From NCBI GenBank assembly GCA_004764695.1, contig SMSO01000032.1:8588483-8652482 (forward strand): a stretch of DNA of 64,000 bases, given 5' to 3'. Shown one piece after another: positions 11,266-63,775 of the stretch (positions are counted from its first letter, which is position 1; every line of letters starts with the position of its first letter). Both the position numbers and the translations under genes were made by a program. This DNA comes from Schizochytrium sp. TIO01 (Eukaryota > Protista > Bigyra: Labyrinthulomycetes). Below the pieces are notes generated by a model. It was given only the letters and a program-made list of their open reading frames with translations, did not search any database and had not been told where the DNA came from.

Positions 11266-11336
11266 TCTCCCATGATGTAATGGTAACATATCAGACTTTG
11301 AATCTGAATCCCTGGGTTCGATTCCCGGTGGGAGAT
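11266..11336 (+). tRNA. tRNA-Gln (anticodon UUG)
   Basis: Full cloverleaf: acceptor TCTCCCA/TGGGAGA, D-stem ATGT/ACAT, anticodon stem TCAGA/TCTGA with loop CT-TTG-AA, T-arm CTGGG-TTCGATT-CCCGG; downstream T-run terminator. Confidence 0.95.
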
Positions 11337-14011: not shown

Positions 14012-14082
14012 TCTCCCATGATGTAATGGCAACATATCAGACTTTGAATCTGAATCCCTGGGTTCGATTCCCGGTGGGAGAT
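14012..14082 (+). tRNA. tRNA-Gln (anticodon UUG), second copy
   Basis: Identical to the 11266 copy except one D-loop T>C; followed by T-runs. Confidence 0.95.
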
Positions 14083-45932: not shown

Positions 45933-48900
45933 CTATTCATCTATAGGAGAGACTAGGAAGCTTTCTTCAAGGTCTGGAAAAGCCTCTAGCACACCTGCCA
46001 GAGCGTAAAAGTAACTTTTCTTCTGATTGGATGACTTGTAGGCAAAGCCGCCAAAGGGGTTGAGTTTCTCGTTGAAAGAAGGAGGAAGGATTTTCTCCCC
46101 ATGGAAAATATAACAGAACTCGGTCTCCTCGCCTTCAAGCTGGAGTTTTTCGATTGTCACCTTTTGCCAACGGTCCTTTAAGCTATGAACAGTTTGCTCA
46201 GGTAGCTCATATGGACCGTTGTAGCTTAATGCAGAACCGACTGTAAGAGCTGATGCAGAGATGAACTGGCGATCGGCACCAAAATATAAGAAGCCCCCAT
46301 AATGTAGCAAGCGGCGAATAGTGCTCTTATCATTTTGATTTTCGAGGAAATGAAGCTCTGTCATGTCAAGATTGTGCACTGGATAGGCCCAGCAGTAAAA
46401 GTGAGCATCAGCTGGGATAAACCAATGTCGCTGCAAACCGCGACGATTTACACCTCGTTCTTTGTGCAAATTAACTCCGCCAAGAGGACTTATTCTACCT
46501 GTCAACTTTTTACCGAGTGAATAGTACCCAACGAACTTGCGAGGGCAAATGAAGGTGTATTGATTGTTTGCAAAGTCAATTTTAATGTCTAGTCGAGGAG
46601 TTGACATCACACCGAAAGTATTTAGGTTAAGATAAGGCCATTGAGGAGGCTCAACCTGTGGGTCGAGGGAATCGTTGAAGATTGCTCCTTCAAGGCGATC
46701 TACGAGCGAATTACCATAAGACGCTTCTCTTTCTCCGACAAGCTCAAGCCATTTTAAAAACTGCTTTCGCGGCATTGCAGTCTCTCGATGCAGAGCACGA
46801 CGTACAAAGTCTGCTAAATCGCTCACAAGTGCGAGGACCTTAGCACTGTGAGGATTATCAGACCCAGGCTCGTCATATTGGAGCTTACCATTGTATTTTT
46901 GTAGGAGATCAGGGGATAGCTCTGAGATTCTATGGATAATGTGATCAATCCTTTCCTTAAAGCTCTCTTTATTGTTATCGCTGAAGGCATGCTCTTGTAA
47001 ACCTTCGAAGGATGCGTGGTTTTGAAAAATTTCGACCCGTGTTTCCTCTTCGAAAACCTCAACGTTGCCTGAATTCGGAGCTGCTGCGATGGAAGGCTTG
47101 CGCTCTTCGGTACTTTTCAGAGCTATTTTTTGACTTTTCTCAGGCTTTCTTTTGCCTACTACAAGCCTCAGAGATGTTTGGTAGGTCTCGATTTGCTTTA
47201 TAAGAATCTTGTTCACAGCAAAGAGGAACAACTCACTAGGATGATCCAGATATAGGAACTGAATGTCTTGAAGCCCGTTCCATAGCAGGTCACCATCACT
47301 CCATGGGATTCTAGAGCCACGAAGATCAAGTTCACGAAGTGAAGGACAGTTTAAGCGAATAGAAGATGCAACATCGGCAAAGTTACCCGAATGGTTGAGG
47401 CGTAGCTCGCGAAGAAATGGAGTCTTTTTGGTGAGATTGCGGATGTTTTCGTCAGTGAGATTACCAGAGAAGCTTACCAATGAGAGATAACGCATAGAAC
47501 GACTGATACAGTTAATAAAGTTCGGGTACTCGTCCGTTTTCATGTGAACGTTCACATTATCGAGGTGTAAAGCTCGCAAGGATGAGCCACAACGTTTCAT
47601 CAATTCTACCAGCGAGTGCCCATAAAATTCTGAGTTGGCATCGCAGTGAGGATCAATAACCAGCGCTAGCTCATGGAGACCAGTGCAATGATTTGCTATA
47701 GAAATAAGTGTGTCGTTCGTAAGATTCGGAAGGTTACGCAGACGAAGCTCGCGTAGGTACTTGTGACTGCCTTGGGCGATATGAGCAATACCAGAGTCAG
47801 AAACATCAAGACACGAGTCAAGAGTAAGTGATGTTAAAGCAATGGACCCTCTTTCATGGAAAGCCTGTAAACCTGCATCAGACACCTTTGTGCAAAAGCT
47901 AAGGTTCAAGTTCTGTAGACTCTGACATTTGATGGCAACAAGCCTCAGCAAATCGTCATTGACACTTACACAGTGGGTTAGATCAAGAGTACGAACGCAT
48001 TGGAACATACGTACAGGGTCCATTCTGCTAAACACGAAGGGGAGCCAGTACTCATTAAAATTCATTCCATTCTGCACGCGACGAACACCTGCCCTTCCTG
48101 TGCAACAAAGCAACGTAGTACAAGGCAATTGGACTGGACAAAGCACACTCTTCTTTGCAATCTCTGATTCAACATCTACCAAAGGGAAAGGGTCCCCTTC
48201 TAAAACAAGAGTTTCTTTGAGGGATTTACGAAAGTGCTTGTAGGCACGGTATGATGCCCAGTCCGCCGAAGCCCAGAACAACGAAATGCCGAATGTCAGA
48301 GGGCAAACAAGGATCTTCATCATCCAGCTCGCAACGTAAAGTGGAATCGAGGAGCATTGACTCACGTCATGTTCAGGATCCCACTGGAAGAACTCAGCCA
48401 ACGCACGCTTCACAGATCTGAAGACCTTATCTTCACTACTAGGATGTTTCTTAAAAGTGGTGCTGTCGTCACGTTCGTGTAGATCATCGCCATCTTCGAT
48501 TCGCTGCAAATATATGTCCACATCAGAATCTCCAACAATATGACGGGCTAGTAGTAGATTGCGGAGTATGGGAATATCATTGAGCAGGTAATACGCTTCG
48601 ACAAGTTGCCGGGTGACCGCTAATAACGAAGTTATAAGCGTGATTGAGAAAATAATACCAATAGTGCCATGCTGAAATGAAGTCAGGTAGACAATCTCCA
48701 CAGCGAGCTGAGGCAGATCCTTGAGTAGCATGACTGCTGCGGTGAGGATCGACATGCGTGCAGCCATAAAATCAACCTTTGCTTGTGTGGAGATAGAATC
48801 TTTGATGAAACTCCCCACCGATTCTCCAATAATTTTTTGACGAAGTGATTCTTGATCTCTGAATGATTGCTTCACAAATACAGTGAAGCCCGAGATTGGC

Positions 48901-49778
48901 TCTACCAGAGCAAGAATGACGCCAAAGAAGTATTTTCGTATGCGCTTGGGATCCTTCCAGTCAACTTGCCTGAACATGGATGCACCAATAACAAGACGGC
49001 CAAGAAAAGTAGCAGCAAGTGCAGCAACGGAGATCCAAAACAAAAATGACCAGAAGGTGGAGATCAAAGGCACAAGTTGAGTCACTAGGAAGAGAATGTC
49101 GGTAATCATATTTGCACTTTCAAGAAGTGCGTCTATAATCCCACCATACATGTCTTGCCGTTGACGTTTCTCAAACTCGTGTGGTAGAGTAATGCGCCGT
49201 GGCATACCTTTTCCCTTCATCCACCGTGTTTGACAAAATGTTATTCCAAGAAGCCTTCCCATAGATTGACATGTTGTGGCTACAGGCTTAAAAAAGCTTG
49301 CAAAACTGTTTGTTTGACCTTTATATGCTTCCACAGGGTTATCAGACCTGAACATAACTTCATCATAAATTTCTGCATGGTACTCATGAAGGTATTCAAT
49401 TCTATCCATAAACTTGGAGACAATGCGCATAAAATCTTCTAAATCTCCCATGAGTGCCTCAGCTCCACTGCGATAAAGTTCACGACCACGCTTAGCAGTA
49501 TCCACCGCAGTTTTCCGAGAATGTTTCTCGTCTCCATGTTGACGAAGAGCACGGTAGTCAATCGTGTAGTAGTGGTCAATGTTTGCGAGGCGGTTGCCGA
49601 TGGTGACAGCAGCCTCTACAAGCTTAGGGTCGTAAAGAAATTTACCATTTTCGATTGCCCGGATGAGGCGATGCTTGATAACAACATCCGTATCATGCTC
49701 TTTCGAGGCTTCACATTCTTCATCAATTATGTGATCAACTTCTTCGTTCTTACTTAGGATCCTTTCATACAAAGACAT
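45933..49778 (-). CDS. Half-XK(R)-like multipass membrane + LRR protein, paralog 1 (~1281 aa from first usable ATG)
   Basis: Long ORF; TM block with NMITDILF and LLKDLPQLAVEIVYL; cysteine-containing LRRs (LQNLNLSFCTKVSDAGL); duplicated C-terminal GGFxY module; collinear with the two downstream paralogs. The ORF track begins at GTG 49838, so the start is uncertain. Confidence 0.85.
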   Translation of the reverse strand: MSLYERILSKNEEVDHIIDEECEASKEHDTDVVIKHRLIRAIENGKFLYDPKLVEAAVTIGNRLANIDHYYTIDYRALRQHGDEKHSRKTAVDTAKRGRELYRSGAEALMGDLEDFMRIVSKFMDRIEYLHEYHAEIYDEVMFRSDNPVEAYKGQTNSFASFFKPVATTCQSMGRLLGITFCQTRWMKGKGMPRRITLPHEFEKRQRQDMYGGIIDALLESANMITDILFLVTQLVPLISTFWSFLFWISVAALAATFLGRLVIGASMFRQVDWKDPKRIRKYFFGVILALVEPISGFTVFVKQSFRDQESLRQKIIGESVGSFIKDSISTQAKVDFMAARMSILTAAVMLLKDLPQLAVEIVYLTSFQHGTIGIIFSITLITSLLAVTRQLVEAYYLLNDIPILRNLLLARHIVGDSDVDIYLQRIEDGDDLHERDDSTTFKKHPSSEDKVFRSVKRALAEFFQWDPEHDVSQCSSIPLYVASWMMKILVCPLTFGISLFWASADWASYRAYKHFRKSLKETLVLEGDPFPLVDVESEIAKKSVLCPVQLPCTTLLCCTGRAGVRRVQNGMNFNEYWLPFVFSRMDPVRMFQCVRTLDLTHCVSVNDDLLRLVAIKCQSLQNLNLSFCTKVSDAGLQAFHERGSIALTSLTLDSCLDVSDSGIAHIAQGSHKYLRELRLRNLPNLTNDTLISIANHCTGLHELALVIDPHCDANSEFYGHSLVELMKRCGSSLRALHLDNVNVHMKTDEYPNFINCISRSMRYLSLVSFSGNLTDENIRNLTKKTPFLRELRLNHSGNFADVASSIRLNCPSLRELDLRGSRIPWSDGDLLWNGLQDIQFLYLDHPSELFLFAVNKILIKQIETYQTSLRLVVGKRKPEKSQKIALKSTEERKPSIAAAPNSGNVEVFEEETRVEIFQNHASFEGLQEHAFSDNNKESFKERIDHIIHRISELSPDLLQKYNGKLQYDEPGSDNPHSAKVLALVSDLADFVRRALHRETAMPRKQFLKWLELVGEREASYGNSLVDRLEGAIFNDSLDPQVEPPQWPYLNLNTFGVMSTPRLDIKIDFANNQYTFICPRKFVGYYSLGKKLTGRISPLGGVNLHKERGVNRRGLQRHWFIPADAHFYCWAYPVHNLDMTELHFLENQNDKSTIRRLLHYGGFLYFGADRQFISASALTVGSALSYNGPYELPEQTVHSLKDRWQKVTIEKLQLEGEETEFCYIFHGEKILPPSFNEKLNPFGGFAYKSSNQKKSYFYALAGVLEAFPDLEESFLVSPIDE

Positions 49779-51499
49779 ATTATCTAAATCTGTTCTGAGC
49801 GCAGCAGCTTCCAACTGGGGGGGGGGGAGAACCTTCACTTCACTCTATCTGACGCCCATCAGGTGCTCGATTGCCTTGCCCGGACTCAATGAAAGCAGTT
49901 CGGAGTTTGGGGTCTGCTGTCGAGACCGTCGCTATTGTCCAGGAGGGATTTTAAAAAATGGTACCCGTAAGTACCTACTCTCAAAGCACCTTCCCGAAAG
50001 GGCTTTCTATTCGAAGAGTGCTTTTTTTGTTTTAACACGGCAATGCTTTCCACTTTTAATTAATACAGGAACAATGAATTGGCGAATCCAAGTTCAGTCC
50101 AAGTGCTGCGGTTTATGATTTTCTTGTTGAACAGGCTTACAGACTGAGCTGCTTATGTCGAAAGCAACAGTGGGATTGATGCTAATTGAGAATAAAGTCT
50201 GCTCATCCAGAGGAAGATTGAAAAGCCTTTAGATTGCAGATACAAATAGGTAGTTTTGCTCGAAAATTCAGGTTGGATGCAAAGGACACCAACATTAAGT
50301 ATACCAGCGGCTACCTAGTATATTTGATAGGAATATAGTAGATAGTATATTTGTAGGCTACTCGTAATAATACAAGCATGTGCACACGCAGGCCTCGTGT
50401 GCTAGCCTGCTTATATACTAAAGCCATCCTGACTAAGACAATGAGCTTGGCTGGTCCTGTGCCACATATTTGGTAGAACTGTAGTAGCTTTCAGAGTATG
50501 TTTCATGTGCGAGAATGTAGTTGCTGACCCATCTTCATTTTAAAAGGCACCCAAGCTTGAAGTTGAAATATCTCAAGCTTTAGATGCGTGTGCACCAAAA
50601 AGTTTTGATTAAAGAAAAAAAGGATTCAACCATTGGTTATGATCATTCTGATATAGTGATGAAGTTAAACTTGCGGAACTTGGCAAAGTAAGTAGTAGTT
50701 CTACTGAAGTCACTACATCGGTGTTCTGGTATTATTCTCTTCAAGCTGGATATCTTGGCACGTGCTCTACCAAGTCAATGCTTTCTGGAGGTTTGTATTT
50801 TTTGGATTCTTCAGCACCTGCTCAAAGCATCCAACTAAAATTGAATGGAATTTGCACTTAGGTCGAGGGGCTGTTGAGAGAAAACTGTTGGAGACTAAAT
50901 CCTTGCCAAAGTCGCAGGAGCGGAAGCTAAGAAGTGAGCACGCTACCCCTTCCCCCGCTTTCATCCAAAATCATTTACGCCACTTGTAATGTTGTGCTCA
51001 CTAATACAAAAATGCAGTGTGCACGTGCATGGTGTGTGTGCAGCCAGAAAATGTTTTCCGCTACCCCAAGATGACGAGCTCATTGAAGGGCAGGCTGCCA
51101 AGAGCACTACGCATTGACTTATTCACGAGAGGCGAGGCGTCATATAATTTCAAACATCAGCCTAATTGCCTGCATAAAAATCTTCCCAGTTCGATCTGAA
51201 CGAGTAATTAGCAGGAAATTGTTGTCAATGAAGATCACATTACCCCTATGGAGAATAGACTGAGCATCAGTGAAAAATATTCAAGTTCTCACATGTTAAG
51301 CATATGGTTTACTCCCATCTGAATTGATGATGAAGCTATTTAGTAGAAATGAAAGGTAATCAATGTGCTTGATCACACAGTTTTTCAAGATGCAAAATAG
51401 TTCAATTTCAAAGGAGATTTACATGCAAATATACACAACACTCGGAGTGATAGGAGATGTACAAATCCGAATAGAATTTAAAAAAAAGTATAGTATAAT

Positions 51500-54400
51500 T
51501 TAATGATGAAGAGGTTTAGGAATAAGGTCATCCGGGATGACCTCGAGGACATTGCAGAGGGAATAGAAGTAGCTATCATATTTTTTCGTTGGGTCTTTGG
51601 AATCAACTCTGTACGCAAATCCACCGAATTGGTTCTTTGTCTTGTTAAACACAGGTGGAAGAATAGTTTCATTTTGGAAAATATAGCAGAAGTAAGCCTT
51701 TTCAGCAATTTCGGGAATGAGACCCTGAATGGTGACTTCTTGCCAACGTTTCTCGGCTCCCAAGAGCTCTACAGTTTGGTCTGGTAGCTTGAAGGGGCCG
51801 TTAAAGCTAAGAGCTGATCCTATCGTAAGTGCAGATGCAGCGACGAAGTGACGATCAGCATCGAAATAGAGATAGCCACCGTAGTGCAGAAATCGACGCA
51901 CAGTATCGCCGTAGCGCTGATGCTCAAGGAAGTTGAGTAAGGAAGAGTCGAGGCCCTCAACAGGATATGCCCAACAGTAGAATCGTGCATTTTCTGGAAT
52001 GAACCAAAACTGTTGAAGACCTGCACGTGTTGCACCGGGAACCTGGTGTAAGTTCACCTCACCCAATGGACTGATTTTACCCTTGAGAAACTTGTTGTCC
52101 AATGAAAGTGAAAAGATGTCCACAAATTCATCAGGGCAGATAAATTCATACTCGTTCTTAGAAAAATCGATTTTGATGTTGAGACGACGAGTGGACATAA
52201 CTCCAAACGAGGACAACGAAATGTAAGGCCAGGGTACAGAACTAGATATAGAGTCTGCCTCGCCTTCTCCACTACGAGATACAACAGCAGCACGCAAGCG
52301 GGACTGCAGAGTTGTGCCATGTTCTAGTTCGCCTTCGCATACAAGGCTAGACCACACTTTATAGTCTGAGGAATTGAACGACAAACGATAGTCCGCGCGG
52401 CGAACATAATCAAGGATGTCACTAACAAGTGCCAAGATAGCCATGTCTGGAACGTTATTGTATTGAAGTTTTCCAGCATAGAGTTCTTTAAACCTTGGTA
52501 AAATCTTGTTGATGGCCTCAATTTGCGAGCAAATTGAGTTTTGCTCTTCATGCATTCGGATCGCTGGATGAACCACCTCTGATGCATCTGCAGTGGTATT
52601 GCCATCATCTGCTATTGTAATTCGCGTCTCTGCATTCGAAGTGGACCTTCCAAAACAGGAGGCTGTAAACATGGATTTTTTGGATAGCCTCTGGCGGAGT
52701 TTGTCGTACTTTTTAAGACGATTCGCATTGTGACCCAGATAAATACGAATCTTTTCGGGAAGTACACGGTGTGTCCAAAACCAAAATTTCTCATTCGGGT
52801 GGTCAAGCTGGAGAACCTCCAAATCAGGAAGCATAGTCCAGAGCTCTGTGCTTGTGTTCCATGGTACCTGGGTTCCGTTCATGCCAATGATGTTGAGCGA
52901 AGGACAGTTTTCGGTAAAGTAAGACACATTCTTGATCTTCGGAATGTCTGCAATCCGTAGCTCTCGAAGAAAAGGCGTACGCATAGTTAGAGCGTCCAGG
53001 CGAGAGTCAGAGAGAGACTCCATGCCTCCAAGTGACAACACTCGTACAAATCGACTGAGGCTATCTATGAACTCCTGAAAGTCAGAATCCTTAAATTTGA
53101 AGTTGATATTGTCCAGATGAAGCGAGCGAAGGGATGAACCACAGCGCGTCATGAGGTGTGCAAACGTGCTTCCTTTCATTGAGCAAAACCCATCTCGCTC
53201 TTCTTGGATAAAGACATCTTTATAGATAAGATCAACATCAAGGGCAAGCTCCCGAAGTCGGGGGCAGTTGTCGCCGATGTGGTTTAAGCTAAGTTCAGTC
53301 AACTCAGGAAGATTTCGTAGACTGAGCCGGGAAAGATGACGGTGACTATTCTTTGCAATATGTTCGATACCATCATCCGTGATTTTCATACAGTTGTCTA
53401 AGGTAATTGAAGCGAGAGCAATGCAACCCTCATCACGCAAGGCTTTAAGGCCATTGTCAGTGACATTTGAGCAAAAGCTGAGATTCAAGTTTTGAAGACT
53501 CGGACACTTTCTTGCAACAAGTTGAAGTACCTGATCATCGACACTAATGCAGTCTGTGAGCTCAAGGGTGCGAATACACTTGAAAAGACCAATGTGATCC
53601 ATGCGACTAAACGTGAAACTAAGAATACCTTCATCAAAGTTGATACCATTCTGTACCCGCTTCACACCGGTGTCTCGGCTTAGAAAGCGCTTCAGAGGAT
53701 TAAAGCCTCTCTGATTATGTGAGCTTTCAGGTTTGGAGCTGACTTTGGCATCTATTTTGACGATTGGAAACGGCTCACCTTCCATGACTAAAGTTCCGTT
53801 CAATGTATCGCGAAAATGTTTGAATGCAGTCCAAGAATACATACTTGCCGAAGACCATGTCAGCGAAAGTCCAAGCGTAATTGGCGCCATGACAAGTTTC
53901 AAGAGCCAGCTTGTCACGAATAAGCAGCAAGTGGTTTCAGGTGCATTAAAAGGATCCCAGTCGAAAAATTTCAACAGTGCAGATTTAACGCTTTGATCGG
54001 ATCGTCGTGCACGGTTCTGAAAGTACTTGCCTCCACTCGAGCGACGGCGGCCAGGACCAGGGCCTCCACGCTCTCTACCTGCGTTGTTTGGGTGAAACGA
54101 GGCTGTCTCGGGACTGTCCTCGTCATTGTTAGGTTCGCCGGTCCTTGTTGCTCGCCTAGGTCTCCCGTGATCTTTGTCTTCGTATGTATCATTTGCAATA
54201 CGAAATGTGTCGTCAGCGTTTGGGTTCAGAACAAGGTGACGTGCCAAGACAAGGTTGCGTAGCATGGGGATATCTTGAAGGAGATTGTAAGACTCTGCGA
54301 TTTGCCGTGTAGCTGCAAGCAAAGAGGTGATGAGCGCAACCCAATAGACGACTCCAAAGGTGCTGTGCTCATAGCTCGTAATATAGAGGAACTCAACGAT

Positions 54401-55510
54401 AATTTGAGGGATATCCTGAACAAGCATTACTACAGCCGTGAGGATAGACATGCGAGCAGCCATGTAGTCTGCTTTAGCTTGCGTAGCAATTGGATCCTTG
54501 ATGAAGCTTCCCACAGACTCACCAATAATACTCTGACCAAGAGATTCTTGATCTTTAAAGGAAAGGCGAACAAAGTCGTTGAAACCAGAGTTGGGCTCTA
54601 TGATTGCAACAACCAGACCAAAAAAGTACTTGCGCACGCGCTTAGGATCCTTCCAATCAACATGCTTACGCATCGATACACCAATGCAAAGACGACCGAA
54701 AAAAGTTAGGGCAAATGCTCCAATGGAAATCCAAAAGAGGTACGCCCACGATGTTTTAACCAAAACAATAAGTTCAGTAAACACAAAAAGCATATCGGAT
54801 ACCATATTGGCTACCTCTAGAAGGGCATCGAGTATCGCACCATACAGGTCTTGGCGTTGTCTTTTCTCAAATTCATGCGGCAGGGTGATAACTCGCGGCA
54901 TTGGCAAGCCGTATTTTTTCTCAAAGTGCTTGACAAACTTTCGTGGAACGAAGCCCATACCAACAAACCATACTGCCGAATGAAATCCACTAGAAATTGA
55001 TTCACATAGGTAAGCCCAAAATCCAACAATGGGCTTATATGTCTTGTCTCGATTTTTGTAGCGACTTGCAATTTCACAGTGTGACTCTTCGTGATATTCC
55101 TGAAGAAATTCGATGCGCTCTGTAAGTTTAGAGACAATATGCATGAAGTCTTCAAGATCGTTTAACATGATTTCAGACATGCGCTGGTTCAGGTAACGTC
55201 CCTTGATGCACTTGGCACCGCCTTGCGTAACATAGTGATCCAGATTAGCAAGGCGTGTACCAATGTCCACAGCAGCCTCAATTAGTTTCGGGTCGTACAA
55301 AAATTTACCGTCTTCGATAGCCTTTAGGTGGACATGAGTGATATACTCTTCATCATTATCATTATCTGTTGTAGCTTTGCTGCGAAGAATACTGTGTAGC
55401 CGCCGATCGTCTGCCTTACTCTTCTGCAGGACTTCTTTCACCTCCGATTCGCTGGGCTCCAGTTGATGGAAACTTGGAGTTTTTTGCAAAGTTTGTCTAG
55501 TATCCCCCAT
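51500..55510 (-). CDS. Half-XK(R)-like multipass membrane + LRR protein, paralog 2, 1336 aa
   Basis: Same architecture; NMVSDMLF, MLVQDIPQIIVEFLYI, LQNLNLSFCSNVTDNGL; long near-identical blocks with paralog 1 (ITLPHEFEKRQRQD, IIGESVGSFIKD). Confidence 0.9.
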   Translation of the reverse strand: MGDTRQTLQKTPSFHQLEPSESEVKEVLQKSKADDRRLHSILRSKATTDNDNDEEYITHVHLKAIEDGKFLYDPKLIEAAVDIGTRLANLDHYVTQGGAKCIKGRYLNQRMSEIMLNDLEDFMHIVSKLTERIEFLQEYHEESHCEIASRYKNRDKTYKPIVGFWAYLCESISSGFHSAVWFVGMGFVPRKFVKHFEKKYGLPMPRVITLPHEFEKRQRQDLYGAILDALLEVANMVSDMLFVFTELIVLVKTSWAYLFWISIGAFALTFFGRLCIGVSMRKHVDWKDPKRVRKYFFGLVVAIIEPNSGFNDFVRLSFKDQESLGQSIIGESVGSFIKDPIATQAKADYMAARMSILTAVVMLVQDIPQIIVEFLYITSYEHSTFGVVYWVALITSLLAATRQIAESYNLLQDIPMLRNLVLARHLVLNPNADDTFRIANDTYEDKDHGRPRRATRTGEPNNDEDSPETASFHPNNAGRERGGPGPGRRRSSGGKYFQNRARRSDQSVKSALLKFFDWDPFNAPETTCCLFVTSWLLKLVMAPITLGLSLTWSSASMYSWTAFKHFRDTLNGTLVMEGEPFPIVKIDAKVSSKPESSHNQRGFNPLKRFLSRDTGVKRVQNGINFDEGILSFTFSRMDHIGLFKCIRTLELTDCISVDDQVLQLVARKCPSLQNLNLSFCSNVTDNGLKALRDEGCIALASITLDNCMKITDDGIEHIAKNSHRHLSRLSLRNLPELTELSLNHIGDNCPRLRELALDVDLIYKDVFIQEERDGFCSMKGSTFAHLMTRCGSSLRSLHLDNINFKFKDSDFQEFIDSLSRFVRVLSLGGMESLSDSRLDALTMRTPFLRELRIADIPKIKNVSYFTENCPSLNIIGMNGTQVPWNTSTELWTMLPDLEVLQLDHPNEKFWFWTHRVLPEKIRIYLGHNANRLKKYDKLRQRLSKKSMFTASCFGRSTSNAETRITIADDGNTTADASEVVHPAIRMHEEQNSICSQIEAINKILPRFKELYAGKLQYNNVPDMAILALVSDILDYVRRADYRLSFNSSDYKVWSSLVCEGELEHGTTLQSRLRAAVVSRSGEGEADSISSSVPWPYISLSSFGVMSTRRLNIKIDFSKNEYEFICPDEFVDIFSLSLDNKFLKGKISPLGEVNLHQVPGATRAGLQQFWFIPENARFYCWAYPVEGLDSSLLNFLEHQRYGDTVRRFLHYGGYLYFDADRHFVAASALTIGSALSFNGPFKLPDQTVELLGAEKRWQEVTIQGLIPEIAEKAYFCYIFQNETILPPVFNKTKNQFGGFAYRVDSKDPTKKYDSYFYSLCNVLEVIPDDLIPKPLHH

Positions 55511-58500: not shown

Positions 58501-60004
58501 GATTAAGATACAAAAAGGTTTCAAAAACATTTTATAGCATATACAGCCAAAACGACTGGACGCCCTAATGTTTTAGACTCGTCACACGAACTAGCATGCC
58601 TCCACAGGAGTGTTATGTTATGAACTTTAATGCCTAAATGCTTTTAAAAGAATCTACAAGGATCAGCACAATCCTTATAATGGTCCGCGTTCTTGCAATT
58701 TAGTTTGATCAATTCCCCGCGGAAGACTTCAATTATCTTAGACTTCTACAAGATGCATAGATCTAGTGATCTAGCTGCAGGTTTGTCAGCGTCTTTCTGT
58801 GGGCCAGACTGAGCCGTCTATGGATGAGTTCAAAACCAAACCTCCAGCTCTTGCGGTCTTGGCCTTTCCATCGCTAGTCTTTTCAGTCTCGTACTCGCTT
58901 CATATGCCAGAGCACGCATTTAAAGAGGTTTTCACAGCTGGAGGCATTCCTTTGCTTGCTCTGCACGCATTTTTGTCCACATCTATGCGGCTTTCATAGC
59001 GCGTTTCTCTCAATCTCATCACGTGCAAGTTTAACTGCAGGAAAGAATTCAACTATGCGAAATGAAAAACTGTCCTCCTTCAAGCAATGTCATTACCTAT
59101 CAGCTGAGCCACGTCTTGCAATTGTGCCTGCTTCCACGCCTTGAATAGTCTCGGTCAAAGACGCAACCTTATGCCTTTTGCAGCTTGCCTAGCCTACTCG
59201 GAGAAGCTGAGATTTTCTTTTGGTAAATAAAACACAGCCTTTATCCATCTCGCACGATTTTATCTAAACCCCAAAAGATTGATATGAATGCAGTGAGAGT
59301 GATGATAAGAGCACTTCCCGACTCGATTCCTGCAGTCATATTTCATAATATATACAATTCAGAACAAGCGCCTAAAATTACTACTCGTGATAAAGTACGA
59401 TAATATTATGGTGCGTCGTACTCACCGTGTGTTTGTGTACTCTCAATCACGCCTTATTGAGCGTAAGAATGGTTCCCGCACTATTAGTACTTTCCTTAAG
59501 ACTTACTTGCAGAGACTAAACTTCCCAGCCCACACAAGTTAAAGACTCGTCAGCCAATAATGGGGCAATGGCTCTCATGTGCTGGCACTAGTCTGAATAT
59601 CGAGCTTGTCTCCGTTCCTGCCTCAAGGATCGGGTACGACATTGCAAGATGCAAAAAAACTATGTCCAAGCAAATATAGCATAGCTAAAGTAATATTTAG
59701 CCACAATGTCCGTCGATCATCATAACAGGAACGTGACAATTCAGCAATGACCATAGAACTTAGTCTTTCACCTAAAAACACAAGCAAAATAATCAACGTA
59801 TCGTCGAAGCCTTGCGTTGGCTTTGACGAGATTGTTCGTACGCAGCACAAGTTGATCTAGCGAGCAAGCCTCTTCGTGCGCCGGTGGCAGTCTCTTTGCT
59901 CCCGCCACCCTACTTGATTGGGTTCTTGCCGACATCCTGCCCGGGATCGGCGCGTGCCGCATCCAGGTTAGGCTGACAAGCATCGACAGCTTTGGCATAA
60001 ACCC

Positions 60005-63000
60005 ATGAACAATCCTGAGGTTTATGTTGTTGAAAGAAGCGATGAGAATGATGAAGATGATGATGACGAGGAGGAGGAGGAAGTCGAACGACGTGTTCTC
60101 AAAAACTGGAAAGAGGTTAGACTAAATACAAGGCATGTGGAAGCGATATCAAGAGGCGAGTTTCTTTATGACCTGCCACTGGTTGAGCGGCTGACAGAGC
60201 TTGGTAGTAGGCTTTCCACGCTAGATCACTACGTGTCTCTCAATGCAAAAAATGAACGAGAAATTCGTGGGCCGAGAGCGGCCATGTTGATGAGTGACCT
60301 GCAAGATTATCTAGAGGTGCTTTCACAATTGCACGAACGAGCTAATGTTTTGCACTATGATCATGAGATGTTAAACAGGGTTGTTTTTGACCAATCCCTT
60401 ACGAAAAACCATGCTGCATGGGTTCTTAAAAAATTCAGGATTGCACTCTACAAACTCGCACGAATGATTGGGATCTTCCCAGAGCTATTTCGGCCAGATC
60501 GTGATAGCCAGAGGAGAAGAATTGACGCAGCAGATTTAGCAAAAGTGCCTACACCGTTTCTGAGTTTTGAAGAGCAGCTTGACCAGGTTTGCGGGAGGAC
60601 AGCTAGCCTCCTTTTTGCTGCCACGAACCAGAGCCTCCATTGGTGGTTTGTTTGTGGCGTGCTTTATAGCGTGTCAGAGAACATTGCTCTCTTTGCACTT
60701 GGGTTATGCTTTATCGTTTTATCTTTTGCAAGTCGCCTTGGGCTGTGCTTGAGTTTCTGGTATGACGTCGAGTGGACTATGCCATCCACCGTATATCGTT
60801 TCTGGGGTGGAACTCTTTGTGCACTAGTTGACCCCCGCTTGGGGATTAAGATAATTGCTAAAGGAGCAGTGTATCATGAACGTAGCCTTCAGGTTAGTGA
60901 TATACGTACATCGCAGATCCCTCTACAAAAGGACGTCGTTGCGGCGGGCGCAAGTGCAAGCTACCGAACAGTGTATAGCTTGTTTTACATGGGTCTTTTG
61001 CAGCTTCTCGAAGATGTTCCCATGCTTGGGATTCAAGGTATTTACTTACAAAGTTACGGAAAGGAATACGGCTACAGCCATGCCGTCGCGACCGCTCAGG
61101 GAATCACTGCAACATTTGTGATTGTTCAGCTATTCTATATGTGGAGTCATGTACGCCGTGTGCGCTCTCTTCGGTTGTTGTTGAACGCTAGGAATCTGGT
61201 TATTGAGCATGCTCTCCCTCCAGAAGACGATGGCCTCACAGAAGAGCAAATGGATACTGATGATGAGGATGAGGAGGCAGTAGCAATGGACCTAGCTAAT
61301 AAACGGACTGGAAAGCGGGCTGCAAAGCGTATGGCGCGGCTGCAAAAGCTAAAACGGAGAAGAGAAAAACGTAAGAAAAAAATGCATGATAGTTTATCAG
61401 CTTTTACTGTGAAGCAAGTCATGCGTCGTTATGCAGACCCCCCTGTTCGACCATATGTAGATTTTTCATTGTTGCCTTCGATCTGGTGGCAGCGGCTCGA
61501 TATTTATACCGTTCGTAAATTCTACAAAGTGCACGGAATGTCTCCTGCTGGTGTAGGCGCATCGGACGCTGTGCATTCCAGCCGATGTTTGCTCTTTAAC
61601 TTGTTAGAGCGTGAAGCACCATATAATGCGTTGCGGACACTTCAGGTCACGCACTCCAGCGAGGTCAATGCCAACATTATCCGTTCCATTATTACTACTT
61701 CGCCAACGCTTCAACACCTCAATGTGTCGTACTGCGAGCATGTCGATGATGAAGCTATGGCTGTTCTTCAGGAGACTGAAGCAACTCTTGTATCGATTTA
61801 TGTAGATGGTTGCATTCAGATTACAGATGAGGGTATTCGTGCTCTTTCCTTGGGCTGTAAATCTACCCTTGTGCGTCTTTCAATGAGAAATGTTTTGTAT
61901 GTGACAGATCTAGGAATTGCATGTCTTGCGATGCGTTGTTTCGAACTTCGAGAACTATACCTTGATCGCGACCCTTTCATTATTCAAGCGCTTCTGCAGA
62001 AGGAGGGCATTTTGCCAACGGCGAAGTGGGATACCGACTCTTACCTAGACGATCAATTTCATAGCTCTGGACGGCTTTTCGAGGTCATTAGCCAAAAGGT
62101 TCTCTCACGGCTGCACAAAGCTGTGGCCAAAAAAGATTCTCCGATTGGAAAAATTGGTGATCAAGGTCTTATAGCACTAGGCGTGAGTTGTCCAAAGCTA
62201 ACAACCCTCATGATAGACTATGCCACGGGTATGACTGCAGAGGGCCTTAGTAGATTCTGCTATTTAGTCACCCCGTTTCTACAACATCTCGGATTATCTG
62301 GGCATCAAGAGGTAACTGATGAAAGATTGCGAGAAATTGTTACACGTTTACCTCATTTGAAGACACTACGCCTTTCAAGAACGTCAATTACTGACCAGAG
62401 CGTGCCTCTTATCATCGGTTTGCGGCAAAGCTTGCGAGCCTTGTCGCTCGAAGGTACCTCTGTTTCTGTAGCGGGAATAGCAGATATACAAAAAAGCGTC
62501 CCGGCTTACGACTTTGCTCATGTTTCACTCAATTCTCGAGCAGAACATCTTATTCAGCGATACAAAAAGCTATGTGCATGTTTTTTACGAGTAGCAGAAG
62601 TGACACAGAACACAGAAATCCAAGAAGTAATAGAGTCCAAAATTTTACAAGAGATTGAAAGCTGCAATGAACAACTTAGCAAGATTGCAAAAGGGGACAT
62701 ATATGCATCGTGGTCGTCATTCATTCCATCTTCGTGGCCTGGCCATTCCAAGGGAAGAGAACACAATTTGGAAACTATTGTTGCTCAAGGTATTCGTCAT
62801 TTAGCATTTGCAGTAGATTTTATTCGTCGTATGCTTTGGCGACATGCCCCCTCTCCACTAGGTTACACGGCGAAGGAACAGTCTGCATGGCATACAACAT
62901 ATAGTTCTCAGGACCTTGAGGCCTTACAGGACGAATGTGCAGAATATCAGCGACTTATTGTCGATGGCAATGTAAGCAGTGTCGCAACGGAGGCTGGCCA

Positions 63001-63775
63001 AGATAATAATGCTGATGACAGTATGGTTGACACATTTCCCTTTGCAAGTCTACCCCCCATGGGCCTGGAACTTGTGTTAGGACCAAGCCTGAAATTTAAC
63101 TTAGCTCTTTGCACCTACACGTTTATGGTTCCTTTAGCACTGCGGGACATGGTCATCGATCAAGAGACGTCGACGCTCTGTGGGCGTATTTCTCCGAAGG
63201 GACCAATGTCAATGGAAATGCGAAAATTGTGTTCACGGGGAGAACTCGCTCGAGCTTCGCAGTTTGTGTATGTGCATCCCCTCCTGGACCGACGGCGAGC
63301 AGCATGGTTTCGAGAGAATAAAGTAATGCCAACTGGTCTTGTACGCTTAGTAACATGGGGTGGTTTCGCGTTTTTAGATCATGATGGTGATTTTGTAGGC
63401 GCAGCAGCGCATAGTTTAGGTGCGACCATAGGGTTCAACGGACCATTTCCTGTTGAGAAAAAGGTCCTCGGACACCTGCAGCTGGCGAAGCGCTTTCGAA
63501 AGTATAACGGGGATTTACGTTATGCGTTTCTCCATGGCAATGAGGGAGGGTCCCCACATAATACTTGTGGAGCCTTTGTCTTTAGAGCACGCCCTCTTTC
63601 TGAAAATCTTGAGAAGGCTTGCCCGGTAATGTACACAATAGCTCCTGAGTGGACGCCTGAACCTGAGCAGTGGGCATTAAATCATTCACATCTTTTTCAT
63701 AAACACAAGCTAGAAGGCGATACTTTGGCCATTTCAATCGAAGATAGTGGCGAACACCACGACTTGAAAACGTAA
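60005..63775 (+). CDS. Half-XK(R)-like multipass membrane + LRR protein, divergent paralog 3, 1256 aa
   Basis: Shares GEFLYD..RL..LDHY N-domain, LLEDVPMLGIQGIYL, LL.AR.LV, LRRs (LQHLNVSYCEHVDDEAM), DFIRR, GRISP.G, WGGFAF and FNGPF motifs with paralogs 1 and 2. Confidence 0.9.
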   Translation: MNNPEVYVVERSDENDEDDDDEEEEEVERRVLKNWKEVRLNTRHVEAISRGEFLYDLPLVERLTELGSRLSTLDHYVSLNAKNEREIRGPRAAMLMSDLQDYLEVLSQLHERANVLHYDHEMLNRVVFDQSLTKNHAAWVLKKFRIALYKLARMIGIFPELFRPDRDSQRRRIDAADLAKVPTPFLSFEEQLDQVCGRTASLLFAATNQSLHWWFVCGVLYSVSENIALFALGLCFIVLSFASRLGLCLSFWYDVEWTMPSTVYRFWGGTLCALVDPRLGIKIIAKGAVYHERSLQVSDIRTSQIPLQKDVVAAGASASYRTVYSLFYMGLLQLLEDVPMLGIQGIYLQSYGKEYGYSHAVATAQGITATFVIVQLFYMWSHVRRVRSLRLLLNARNLVIEHALPPEDDGLTEEQMDTDDEDEEAVAMDLANKRTGKRAAKRMARLQKLKRRREKRKKKMHDSLSAFTVKQVMRRYADPPVRPYVDFSLLPSIWWQRLDIYTVRKFYKVHGMSPAGVGASDAVHSSRCLLFNLLEREAPYNALRTLQVTHSSEVNANIIRSIITTSPTLQHLNVSYCEHVDDEAMAVLQETEATLVSIYVDGCIQITDEGIRALSLGCKSTLVRLSMRNVLYVTDLGIACLAMRCFELRELYLDRDPFIIQALLQKEGILPTAKWDTDSYLDDQFHSSGRLFEVISQKVLSRLHKAVAKKDSPIGKIGDQGLIALGVSCPKLTTLMIDYATGMTAEGLSRFCYLVTPFLQHLGLSGHQEVTDERLREIVTRLPHLKTLRLSRTSITDQSVPLIIGLRQSLRALSLEGTSVSVAGIADIQKSVPAYDFAHVSLNSRAEHLIQRYKKLCACFLRVAEVTQNTEIQEVIESKILQEIESCNEQLSKIAKGDIYASWSSFIPSSWPGHSKGREHNLETIVAQGIRHLAFAVDFIRRMLWRHAPSPLGYTAKEQSAWHTTYSSQDLEALQDECAEYQRLIVDGNVSSVATEAGQDNNADDSMVDTFPFASLPPMGLELVLGPSLKFNLALCTYTFMVPLALRDMVIDQETSTLCGRISPKGPMSMEMRKLCSRGELARASQFVYVHPLLDRRRAAWFRENKVMPTGLVRLVTWGGFAFLDHDGDFVGAAAHSLGATIGFNGPFPVEKKVLGHLQLAKRFRKYNGDLRYAFLHGNEGGSPHNTCGAFVFRARPLSENLEKACPVMYTIAPEWTPEPEQWALNHSHLFHKHKLEGDTLAISIEDSGEHHDLKT

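What the first reader, a model, noticed from the sequence alone, without database searches (positions are those of the whole stretch)
45933..63775. Three-gene cluster encoding an unrecognised half-XKR-like membrane module fused to LRRs: candidate sensor-gated scramblase/channel system
Seen: three ~1,250-1,340 aa intronless paralogs (two tandem on minus, one divergent on plus) share the order helical N-domain - 4-5 hydrophobic helices - cysteine-containing LRRs - helical domain - duplicated C-terminal module. The membrane block has a D-bearing TM1 (NMITD/NMVSD in paralogs 1-2), an (E/Q/K)-D-x-P-(Q/M)-x-x-x-(E/Q)-x-x-Y helix and a following S/T-rich helix. Established: this pattern resembles the first repeat of XK-related (XKR8/CED-8) scramblases (D..TD; ESAPQL.LQ.Y), which are built from two repeats. 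The LRRs are FBXL/AMN1-type but no F-box is evident. LRRC8/VRAC channels are a precedent for heteromeric pore+LRR paralog families. Inference: these are half-XKR subunits that homo- or hetero-oligomerise into a scramblase or channel controlled by a cytosolic LRR sensor, e.g. for immunity/cell death, self-recognition or osmotic signalling.
Basis: partly seen in the sequence, partly recalled or inferred. Interest (0 to 1): 0.88.

Follow-up and report, generated by a model that had tools for sequence, protein, structure and literature searches.

The report
Single-repeat XKR-like membrane proteins with LRRs
Three neighbouring genes of a marine protist encode large membrane proteins whose membrane part looks like one half of the animal XKR "eat-me signal" lipid scramblases, joined to a leucine-rich-repeat domain; this architecture has not been described and could show how the scramblase fold arose and how it is controlled.

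Summary
Three intronless paralogs (p1 45933-49778 minus, p2 51500-55510 minus, p3 60005-63775 plus) share one domain order. p1 and p2 appear as separate 3.9-4.3 kb contigs in assemblies that look like transcriptomes.

The hallmark residues keep the XKR spacing: N/D-x3-D on TM1 and E/Q-D-x-P-Q/E-L on TM3. They are nearly invariant in about 99 protein clusters from marine protists, and nearly all longer members that I scanned carry FBXL-type LRRs after the module.

Sequence membership in Pfam XK-related is not met. No F-box is present.

The family has two old subtypes. Type A (p1, p2) keeps the buried polar cluster. Type B (p3 and Hondaea GBG29090) has lost it. A and B genes appear to be adjacent in both genera (in Hondaea inferred from accession order), which suggests an A-B pair that mimics ND-CD.

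Oligomerisation, scrambling and LRR gating remain untested; the homodimer prediction gave no verdict. I class it as a new variant of a known kind.

The parts
45933..49778 (-). Paralog p1 (type A), 1281 aa from the ATG at 49778. The ORF is listed from a GTG at 49838.
   Evidence: ORF. It is identical to database protein P0001, which has 1281 aa. Transcript-like contigs end at 49809-49905.
49224..49676 (-). p1 N-terminal helical domain (aa 55-205), predicted cytosolic.
   Evidence: AF2 model helices. It is conserved in all full-length family members and has no fold match above noise.
48543..49166 (-). p1 XKR-ND-like membrane module (aa 225-432): TM1, TM2, a partly inserted helical hairpin (EP..G), TM3 (KDLPQL) and TM4.
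48267..48347 (-). p1 extra hydrophobic helix (aa 498-524), specific to type A. Its topology is uncertain: fifth TM helix or re-entrant helix.
   Evidence: Hydropathy 1.5-1.8. The motif NW..K.L.AP.TLG.SL is conserved in the window's and Hondaea's type A proteins and absent from type B.
47229..48005 (-). p1 cysteine-containing (FBXL/AMN1-type) LRR domain, aa ~612-870.
   Evidence: Pfam LRR_6 at 3e-5, plus LRR_4. No F-box. Strain differences here are 13 nonsynonymous to 4 synonymous.
46668..46976 (-). p1 three-helix bundle (aa 955-1057).
45954..46637 (-). p1 beta-rich, internally duplicated C-domain (aa 1068-1295).
   Evidence: AF2 model. Self hhalign probability 91.8%. No fold match. Only four copies in the genome.
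51500..55510 (-). Paralog p2 (type A), 1336 aa.
   Evidence: ORF. It equals P0002. Transcript-like contigs of 4272-4276 nt start at 51472-51511.
54239..54862 (-). p2 XKR-ND-like membrane module (aa 217-424).
   Evidence: 62% identical to the p1 module. Motifs LEVANMVSD and QDIPQI.
52787..53584 (-). p2 LRR domain (aa ~643-908).
   Evidence: Pfam LRR_At5g56370, LRR_6 and LRR_4, all sub-threshold. Alignment to p1.
51503..52228 (-). p2 beta-rich C-domain.
   Evidence: Alignment A3. Genome search hit at 1.3e-121.
60005..63775 (+). Paralog p3 (type B), 1256 aa, divergently oriented to p2 across a 4.5 kb spacer.
   Evidence: ORF. It equals P0004. Sister to Hondaea GBG29090 with support 100.
60575..61192 (+). 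p3 degenerate XKR-ND-like module (aa 191-396). The TM1 E and D, the EP of the hairpin and the TM4 RQ..E are lost; EDVPML is kept.
   Evidence: Profile hit at 4.6e-61. Residue comparison.
61622..62494 (+). p3 LRR domain (aa ~540-830).
   Evidence: Pfam LRR_6 at 9e-8.
63038..63694 (+). p3 beta-rich C-domain.
   Evidence: Alignment A3. Genome search hit at 1.9e-106.

Best explanation
The three genes encode members of a thraustochytrid family of about 1,300-aa membrane proteins.

Membrane part. It is a single copy of the N-terminal repeat (ND) of XK-related lipid scramblases: TM1, TM2, a helix partly inserted from the cytosolic side, TM3 and TM4. Both ends face the cytosol. The cytosolic N-terminal helical domain, the FBXL-type LRR domain, a helical bundle and a duplicated beta-rich domain therefore hang from this module.

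Subtypes. Type A proteins (p1, p2) keep the membrane-buried polar cluster that marks the XKR ND: E240, N243-x3-D247 on TM1 and [E/Q/K]-D-x-P-Q-L on TM3, together with R281, E313 and Q411/E414. Type B (p3) keeps the fold but has lost most of that cluster.

Most likely mechanism (inferred, not shown). The type A module perturbs or thins the bilayer and scrambles phospholipids as the XKR ND does. It probably pairs with a second half-module, and the neighbouring type B is an attractive partner because an A-B pair would imitate the ND-CD pseudo-twofold pair of XKRs. The cytosolic LRR and C-terminal domains would bind a protein or ligand that switches the activity or places it in the cell.

What is shown: gene structure, probable transcription, domain order, fold similarity, residue conservation and the A/B split. 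What is inferred: homology with XKR (about 0.75), scrambling activity (about 0.35), A-B pairing (about 0.3) and LRR control (about 0.4). The overall confidence of 0.5 refers to the statement as a whole: an XKR-ND-like module with a membrane-perturbing role under cytosolic control.
For: Model. AF2 model of p1 aa 40-450 built from a 61-sequence alignment: mean pLDDT 81.8, pTM 0.79, membrane block above 90.

Fold searches.
- Foldseek against the PDB ranks XKR4 (9boj) and XKR8 (8xej, 7dce) first to third at probability 0.92-0.93. The next rows mostly have probability 0.2 or below; the highest is 0.63.
- Matched chain ranges are 3-192 in XKR8/9 and 108-363 in XKR4. These are the ND only.

Published ND features. 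Four TM helices plus a partly inserted helix; a hydrophilic TM3 kinked at a conserved PQL; conserved acidic residues on TM1 and TM3 (PMC8298096). In XKR4 these are D125, D129, E313 and P316; in XKR8, D26, D30 and E141 (PMC12334663).

Corresponding residues here. The same spacings occur and are nearly invariant across the 99 hits: N243 64/77, D247 74/77, E/Q373 73/80, D374 78/80, P376 71/80. Counting along the ungapped start of the XKR8 match puts D26 on N243 and D30 on D247.

Topology. K/R-rich loops fall on the predicted cytosolic side, which fits XKR topology (sequence).

Sequence-level hints.
- Two collinear, in-register local profile alignments to an XK-like protein of the same genome cover the TM1 motif (E 0.017) and the TM3-TM4 motif (E 0.049).
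- The language-model search listed a cluster carrying PF09815 at a weak score of 0.78.

Module plus LRR is a unit. All but one of the 27 longer hits scanned (P0005 gave none at E<=0.01) show LRR_6, LRR_4 or FBXL-type repeats, which in most lie after the module.

A/B split and adjacency. p3 groups with Hondaea GBG29090 (support 100), while p1 and p2 fall among Hondaea type A genes. GBG29090, 29091 and 29092 have consecutive accessions on one contig.

Selection pattern. Between strains the membrane block shows 2 nonsynonymous to 7 synonymous changes and the LRR shows 13 to 4 (Fisher p = 0.014).
Against: - No significant sequence match to Pfam XK-related, for any paralog or for 19 short family members, even at E<=10. 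A six-frame search of the genome with PF09815 did not pick these genes.
- A profile of the module finds no XKR chain in the PDB sequence set at E<=10.
- Global profile-profile alignment to the genome's XK-like protein failed.
- I could not view the superposition, so residue equivalences come from alignment ranges and are not exact for TM3 (2 residues off).
- Only one repeat is present. A purified XKR4 monomer that scrambles has both repeats, and the cavities discussed for lipid passage lie between ND and CD.
- The homodimer prediction scored 0.00, which the tool counts as no verdict.
- The type-A-specific hydrophobic helix could be a fifth TM helix, which would put the type A LRRs on the other side of the membrane.
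- No functional data of any kind exist.
Confidence: 0.5

Rival explanations
1. The membrane block is an ion channel or a small-solute or proton transporter, not a lipid scramblase. The conserved buried charges (E240, D247, R281, E313, D374, H407 in most members, E414) would form a permeation or binding site, with the LRR as a regulatory domain.
For: There is an unusually dense set of nearly invariant charged and polar residues inside the predicted membrane helices. The XKR9 authors note that the ND acidic cluster distantly resembles a divalent-cation site (PMC8298096). Scramblase folds such as TMEM16 also conduct ions (established knowledge).
Confidence: 0.15
2. The similarity to XKR is convergent, a common four-helix membrane bundle. 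The block would be only a membrane anchor that holds a cytosolic LRR scaffold or adaptor at a membrane, for example as a substrate receptor or docking platform derived from FBXL proteins.
Against: An anchor would not need about 12 nearly invariant polar residues in the membrane across about 99 clusters. All XKR structures top two independent searches, and the hypothesis was made before those searches. The XKR-specific features are reproduced: the partly inserted helix between TM2 and TM3, E-x2-P-Q-L on TM3 and D-x3-D spacing on TM1. No F-box is present.
Confidence: 0.2
3. The proteins are innate-immunity or regulated-cell-death executioners. The LRR would sense a pathogen or danger signal. The helical bundle and C-domain (also found in a separate protein with a CaaX-like C-terminal end) or the XKR-like module would then damage or remodel the membrane, by analogy with CC-NLR resistosomes.
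Against: The CC-like matches tie with release factor 2 and designed bundles. There is no NB-ARC, TIR, death-fold or kinase domain. The polymorphism counts are small, come from one strain pair, and cover only 40 of 56 sites.
Confidence: 0.12

Closest known systems
XK-related (XKR) lipid scramblases: XKR8, XKR9, XKR4, CED-8, XK (Pfam PF09815; PDB 7DCE, 8XEJ, 7P14, 7P16, 9BOJ)
   Same: The fold and connectivity of the N-terminal repeat are shared: TM1-TM2 splayed around a partly inserted cytosolic helix, followed by TM3-TM4. TM3 is hydrophilic and carries E-x2-P-Q-L. TM1 carries polar or acidic residues at i and i+4. Both termini are predicted cytosolic, and regulation by cytosolic parts is plausible.
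   Different: Only one repeat is present (4 TM plus a hairpin) instead of two (8 TM). There is no significant sequence match to PF09815. An invariant Asp sits next to the TM3 Glu, and there are extra conserved residues (R281, E313-P314, H407, Q411, E414). The module is fused to a 200-aa helical N-domain, FBXL-type LRRs, a helical bundle and a beta-rich domain. There is no caspase-site tail. The family occurs in protists, not animals.
FBXL / AMN1-type cysteine-containing LRR proteins (the names given to the homologs by automatic annotation)
   Same: The LRR type is the same (Pfam LRR_6, LRR_At5g56370, about 26-residue repeats with Cys).
   Different: No F-box was detected, so there is no evidence of SCF ligase function. 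These proteins are membrane-embedded and three times longer.
LRRC8/VRAC channels (pannexin-like pore plus C-terminal LRR; heteromeric paralogs)
   Same: The design principle is shared: a four-helix membrane module followed by a cytosolic LRR domain, encoded by several paralogs.
XK-like single-repeat protein of the same genome (L017 ORF, G000:C32; homolog in Hondaea, P0100)
   Same: It also appears to carry only an ND-like half (TM1 with D..SD, TM3 with ESVPQF, then one more TM helix). It gives collinear weak local profile alignments to the family studied here.
   Different: It has a mucin-like Thr/Pro-rich N-terminal ectodomain and an extra TM helix, and no LRR. It gives a sub-threshold PF09815 hit (20.4 bits against a cut-off of 24.8), which the three paralogs do not.

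Membership tests
XK-related (PF09815) | Significant match to the family's sequence profile | tested here: not met
   No PF09815 hit for p1-p3, their membrane blocks or 19 short family members at E<=10. A six-frame genome search with PF09815 found only another gene. The PDB sequence profile search found no XKR.
XK-related (PF09815) | ND fold: TM1-TM2, a partly inserted intracellular helix, TM3-TM4 | tested here: met
   [not shown]
XK-related (PF09815) | Two structurally related repeats (ND + CD, 8 TM) in one chain | tested here: not met
   There is one module only: four long helices plus a hairpin at aa 225-432. There is no second copy in the protein and no further copy in the genome.
XK-related (PF09815) | Conserved acidic/polar residues on TM1 (D-x3-D) and on TM3 (E-x2-P-Q-L kink) | tested here: met
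   Type A has N243-x3-D247 and [K/Q/E]373-D374-x-P376-Q-L, nearly invariant family-wide. This was compared with PMC8298096 and PMC12334663. Type B (p3) has lost the TM1 acidic residues. The superposition of side chains was not seen directly.
XK-related (PF09815) | Phospholipid scrambling activity | not testable with these tools
   This needs liposome or cell assays.
FBXL (F-box/LRR-repeat proteins) | F-box domain N-terminal to the LRRs | tested here: not met
   No F-box family hit at E<=10 in the whole proteins or in the 100 aa before the LRRs.
FBXL (F-box/LRR-repeat proteins) | Cysteine-containing LRRs | tested here: met
   LRR_6 at 3e-5 (p1) and 9e-8 (p3). LRR_At5g56370 at 6.5e-4 (p2).
LRRC8 / pannexin-like | Pannexin-type four-helix membrane fold | tested here: not met
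   [not shown]
CC-NLR coiled-coil domain | Four-helix CC bundle similar to resistosome CC domains | tested here: inconclusive
   [not shown]

The most novel reading that the evidence does not exclude
The cluster would encode a 'split XKR'. An active half-scramblase (type A) and a degenerate half (type B) would assemble into an ND-CD-like unit whose lipid-scrambling or membrane-disrupting activity is switched by ligand binding to the fused cytosolic LRR receptor. Sensor and membrane executioner would then sit in one polypeptide, and the system would be a living model of the pre-duplication ancestor of animal apoptotic scramblases.
Probability: 0.17. Interest if true: 0.88.

Novelty: new variant of a known kind. 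Interest (0 to 1): 0.68.

Why it matters
- Origin of the fold. XKR scramblases are described as an animal family ("conserved from nematodes to humans") with a novel fold built from two repeats. How they move lipids, and which repeat does what, is still debated. A natural single-repeat version that keeps the hallmark buried acidic cluster would show that the ND is an independent, older module. It would make it directly testable whether an ND alone, an ND homodimer or an ND/degenerate-ND pair is enough to scramble lipids.
- Regulation. The constant fusion to an LRR domain in about a hundred protist protein clusters points to a mode of control, ligand or partner binding, that is unknown for XKRs.
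- Annotation. The current 'F-box/LRR-repeat protein' labels on the Hondaea homologs are misleading, and a Pfam-less membrane domain can be defined from alignment A5.
- Biology of the host group. Thraustochytrids are industrial lipid producers with elaborate membrane extensions, so lipid-handling membrane proteins specific to the group are of practical interest.

Tried and rejected
1. Pfam scans of whole proteins, domain pieces and 19 family members at E<=10 gave no XK-related, TMEM26, pannexin or F-box hit.
2. A PDB sequence search with the module profile returned only a chance 58-aa glycoprotein hit at E 1.2.
3. I tried to collect true XKR sequences for a profile-profile test by searching with the genome's own XK-like protein. 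Only 2 relatives were found. Global hhalign against that thin profile failed (probability 0.1%). Local hhalign gave only sub-significant, though in-register, motif alignments.
4. Complex prediction on two copies of the p1 membrane block scored 0.00. The tool's verdict is 'no answer', so this is not evidence either way. The alignment was not used by that tool, and the A-B pair could not be tried because the cap is 1.
The Hondaea gene neighbourhood therefore rests on consecutive accession numbers and a shared contig length, not on inspected DNA.
7. Taxonomy of the wider family: most members come from unnamed metagenome or EukProt records, and only Picozoa and Hondaea are named.
8. No tandem repeats lie in 45-64 kb and no RNA families in the cluster.
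9. The LRRC8-like reading is rejected on fold.
Full report
**Organism and setting**

The window is eukaryotic. The gene just upstream (40807-45489, +) encodes a myosin head with IQ and TPR motifs. Earlier notes of the scan call the genome a labyrinthulomycete or thraustochytrid-like protist. My own searches agree: the only named full-length homologs come from the thraustochytrid Hondaea fermentalgiana. The window is G000:C31:8588483-8652482 of a 64-Mb assembly.

**The observation**

Three long ORFs lie at the stated coordinates.
- p1: 45933-49838 (-). The true start is probably the ATG at 49778, giving the 1281-aa database protein P0001.
- p2: 51500-55510 (-), 1336 aa.
- p3: 60005-63775 (+), 1256 aa.

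They align over their whole length. p1 and p2 are 49% identical, and p1 and p3 are 25% identical.

Four assemblies of about 35-40 Mb from four studies hold the genes. The run type is only guessed as RNA, but these assemblies are about half the genome size.
- The genes appear as separate contigs of 3.9-4.3 kb.
- No joints are seen.
- Nothing covers the spacer 49906-51471.

This is what two intronless mRNAs would give.

**Domain order (p1 numbering)**

- Helical N-domain, aa 55-205.
- Membrane block, aa 225-432.
- Disordered charged linker.
- A hydrophobic helix, aa 498-524, found only in type A.
- Cysteine-containing LRRs, aa ~612-870 (Pfam LRR_6, LRR_4, LRR_At5g56370).
- Three-helix bundle, aa 955-1057.
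- Beta-rich C-domain, aa 1068-1295 (models).

The C-domain's internal duplication is supported by a profile self-comparison (probability 91.8%, E 7e-7). No F-box is detectable even at E<=10. The quoted motifs are all present.

**The family**

A word-based search found only one homolog outside this genome. A profile of the N-terminal half, searched against 1.84 billion cluster representatives, found 99 proteins.
- About ten besides the three paralogs are full-length relatives of 1,195-1,396 aa.
- The rest match only profile positions ~205-435, which is the membrane block, in proteins of 130-1,080 aa.
- All but one of the 27 longer hits that I scanned (P0005 gave none at E<=0.01) show FBXL-type LRR matches, which in most lie after the module.

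So 'membrane module + LRR' is a recurrent unit, and it has no Pfam model. Named sources are Hondaea, a Picozoa single-cell assembly, and two records labelled Durusdinium trenchii. The rest are marine metagenome or EukProt entries.

In this genome the module occurs only in p1-p3. The C-domain occurs only in p1-p3 and in one 483-aa protein elsewhere.

**Test of the XKR idea**

An AlphaFold2 model of p1 aa 40-450, built from a 61-row alignment, reached mean pLDDT 81.8 and pTM 0.79, with the membrane block above 90. It shows a long TM1, then TM2, a short helical hairpin, a disordered loop, a long TM3 and a long TM4.

Three structure searches agree.
- Foldseek against the PDB places XKR4 (9boj) and XKR8 (8xej, 7dce) at ranks 1-3 with probability 0.92-0.93 over about 200 columns. 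Most later rows are at 0.2 or below, and the highest is 0.63. E-values are weak (0.3-0.4).

All XKR matches cover residues ~3-192 of XKR8/9 or 108-363 of XKR4. That is only the first repeat.

- the hypothesis was stated before the search;
- every solved member of one small family comes out on top by two methods;
- the family-specific details described next are reproduced.

**Family-specific details**

The XKR9 paper describes two related repeats, each with four TM helices and a helix partly inserted from the inside. It also describes an unusually hydrophilic TM3 kinked at a conserved PQL, and a strongly conserved acidic cluster on TM1 and TM3 of the ND (PMC8298096). The XKR4 paper names D125, D129, E313 and P316 (D26, D30 and E141 in XKR8). 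It reports a pseudo-twofold relation of ND and CD, and membrane thinning at the ND (PMC12334663).

Aligning all 99 hits to the profile gives nearly invariant residues at the following positions:

| Helix | Residue (p1 numbering) | Conservation |
|---|---|---|
| TM1 | E240 | 68/77 |
| TM1 | N243 | 64/77 |
| TM1 | D247 | 74/77 |
| End of TM2 | R281 | 88/90 |
| Hairpin | E313 | 85/93 |
| Hairpin | P314 | 79/93 |
| Hairpin | G317 | 90/93 |
| TM3 | E/Q373 | 73/80 |
| TM3 | D374 | 78/80 |
| TM3 | P376 | 71/80 |
| TM3 | Q/E377-L378 | 57/80; 38/80 |
| TM4 | H407 | 67/76 |
| TM4 | Q411 | 59/73 |
| TM4 | E414 | 59/73 |

The spacings N/D-x3-D and E-x2-P-(Q/E)-L equal those of XKRs. Counting from the ungapped start of the XKR8 match puts D26 on N243 and D30 on D247. 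For TM3 the count is two residues off. I could not view the superposition itself.

The distribution of K and R in the loops puts the N-terminus, the TM2-hairpin-TM3 loop and the C-terminus in the cytosol, as in XKRs (sequence).

**Sequence-level evidence is weak**

- No PF09815 hit for any family member.
- No XKR chain found with the module profile.
- Only a 0.78 language-model lead to a cluster carrying PF09815.
- A six-frame scan of the genome with PF09815 found a different gene (L017 ORF, 640 aa; 20.4 bits against a cut-off of 24.8). It has a mucin-like ectodomain and itself looks like a single ND half.
- Local profile alignment of the 77-row module alignment to that protein and its Hondaea ortholog gave two collinear, in-register but sub-significant segments. 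One covers the TM1 motif (E 0.017) and one covers TM3-TM4 (E 0.049). The global alignment failed.

I therefore do not file the proteins in PF09815. I rate remote homology with the XKR ND at about 0.75.

**Two subtypes**

A quick maximum-likelihood tree of twelve full-length proteins (SH-aLRT supports; the careful search did not finish) gives these groupings:
- p3 groups with Hondaea GBG29090 (support 100).
- p1 and p2 are sisters (support 100) inside a clade that holds five Hondaea proteins (GBG29091, 29092, 31100, 31101, 30408).

The A/B split therefore predates the two genera, while type A was duplicated independently in each.

Type B has lost most of the polar cluster in both genera:
- TM1 LE..N...D becomes LFAATNQSLH in p3 and LFAVTSQVLS in Hondaea.
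- The hairpin EP becomes DP or DA.
- TM4 RQ..E becomes VQ.. .
- Hondaea type B also loses the ED of TM3.

GBG29090, 29091 and 29092 carry consecutive accessions and EukProt numbers on one 414-kb contig. If they are adjacent, a B gene sits next to A genes in both genera.

In XKRs the ND carries the conserved acidic cluster and the CD does not. An A-B pair would mimic ND-CD. This is an inference. The only complex job, a p1 homodimer, returned no verdict.

**Other parts**

- Extra helix. Type A has a conserved extra hydrophobic helix (motif NW..K.L.AP.TLG.SL, hydropathy 1.5-1.8) that type B lacks. If it spans the membrane, the type A LRRs would face the other side. The intracellular character of FBXL-type LRRs argues for a re-entrant or peripheral helix, but this is open.
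- Beta-rich domain. It has no match. It could not be folded alone, so I do not call it a new fold.
- Strain differences in p1 (window against runs X2 and X3; 40 of 56 sites were listed). There are 2 nonsynonymous to 7 synonymous changes in the membrane block and 13 to 4 in the LRR (Fisher p = 0.014). This hints that the LRR evolves under relaxed or diversifying selection while the module is constrained.

**Mechanism and verdict**

Shown:
- real and probably transcribed genes;
- the domain order;
- an XKR-ND-like fold with the hallmark residues;
- a wide protist family that joins this module to LRRs;
- an ancient active-like/degenerate pair kept side by side.

Inferred:
- the module perturbs the bilayer and scrambles lipids (about 0.35);
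- it works as a pair of halves, perhaps A-B (about 0.3);
- the cytosolic LRR and C-terminal domains regulate or localise it (about 0.4).

Rivals are an ion or solute pathway through the buried charges, a mere anchor with a convergent fold, and an immune or cell-death executioner.

I found no paper that describes an XKR-like module fused to LRRs or a single-repeat XKR. Databases call the homologs F-box/LRR proteins.

I classify the finding as a new variant of a known kind.

Noticed in passing
L017:13-1935 (+) = G000:C32:1431487-1433409: A 640-aa ORF with a Thr/Pro-rich mucin-like N-terminal region and one TM helix. It then has what looks like a single XKR ND half (TM1 with D..SD, TM3 with ESVPQFSLQ, then TM4). 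It gives a sub-threshold PF09815 hit (20.4 bits against 24.8) and has a Hondaea ortholog, P0100. This is a second kind of single-repeat XK-like protein in the same genome.
   Followed up: partly
L008:1366-2817 (-) = G000:C30, about 8904613-8906064: A 483-aa protein (P0102) with a helical N-terminal half, the same duplicated beta-rich C-domain as p1-p3, and a C-terminal CCLIS that looks like a CaaX prenylation box. Only one other homolog was found (P0103, 496 aa). It suggests that the C-domain works at membranes.
   Followed up: partly
window 40807-45489 (+): A 1560-aa intronless myosin (motor domain E 9e-137) with an IQ motif and C-terminal TPR repeats, convergent with p1.
   Followed up: no
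window 57665-59186: Part of the 4.5-kb spacer between p2 and p3 is 65% identical over 1.5 kb to G000:C6:823574-825196, with weaker copies elsewhere. It holds no ORF above 66 aa, so it is possibly a degraded repeat or a non-coding element.
   Followed up: partly
[not shown]
   Followed up: partly
window 49779-49838: The ORF lister starts p1 at a GTG. The database protein starts at the ATG at 49778. One strain's contig has a 1-base deletion at 49828, which would break the frame if this stretch were coding, so it is more likely 5' UTR.
   Followed up: partly
window 11266-11336 and 14012-14082 (+): Two tRNA genes (Rfam 63.5 and 61 bits).
   Followed up: no
P0003, P0010 (database proteins): Two full-length family members are labelled Durusdinium trenchii (a dinoflagellate). 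They branch deeply, outside the two thraustochytrid groups. Whether they are true dinoflagellate genes or come from a labyrinthulomycete contaminant is unknown.
   Followed up: no
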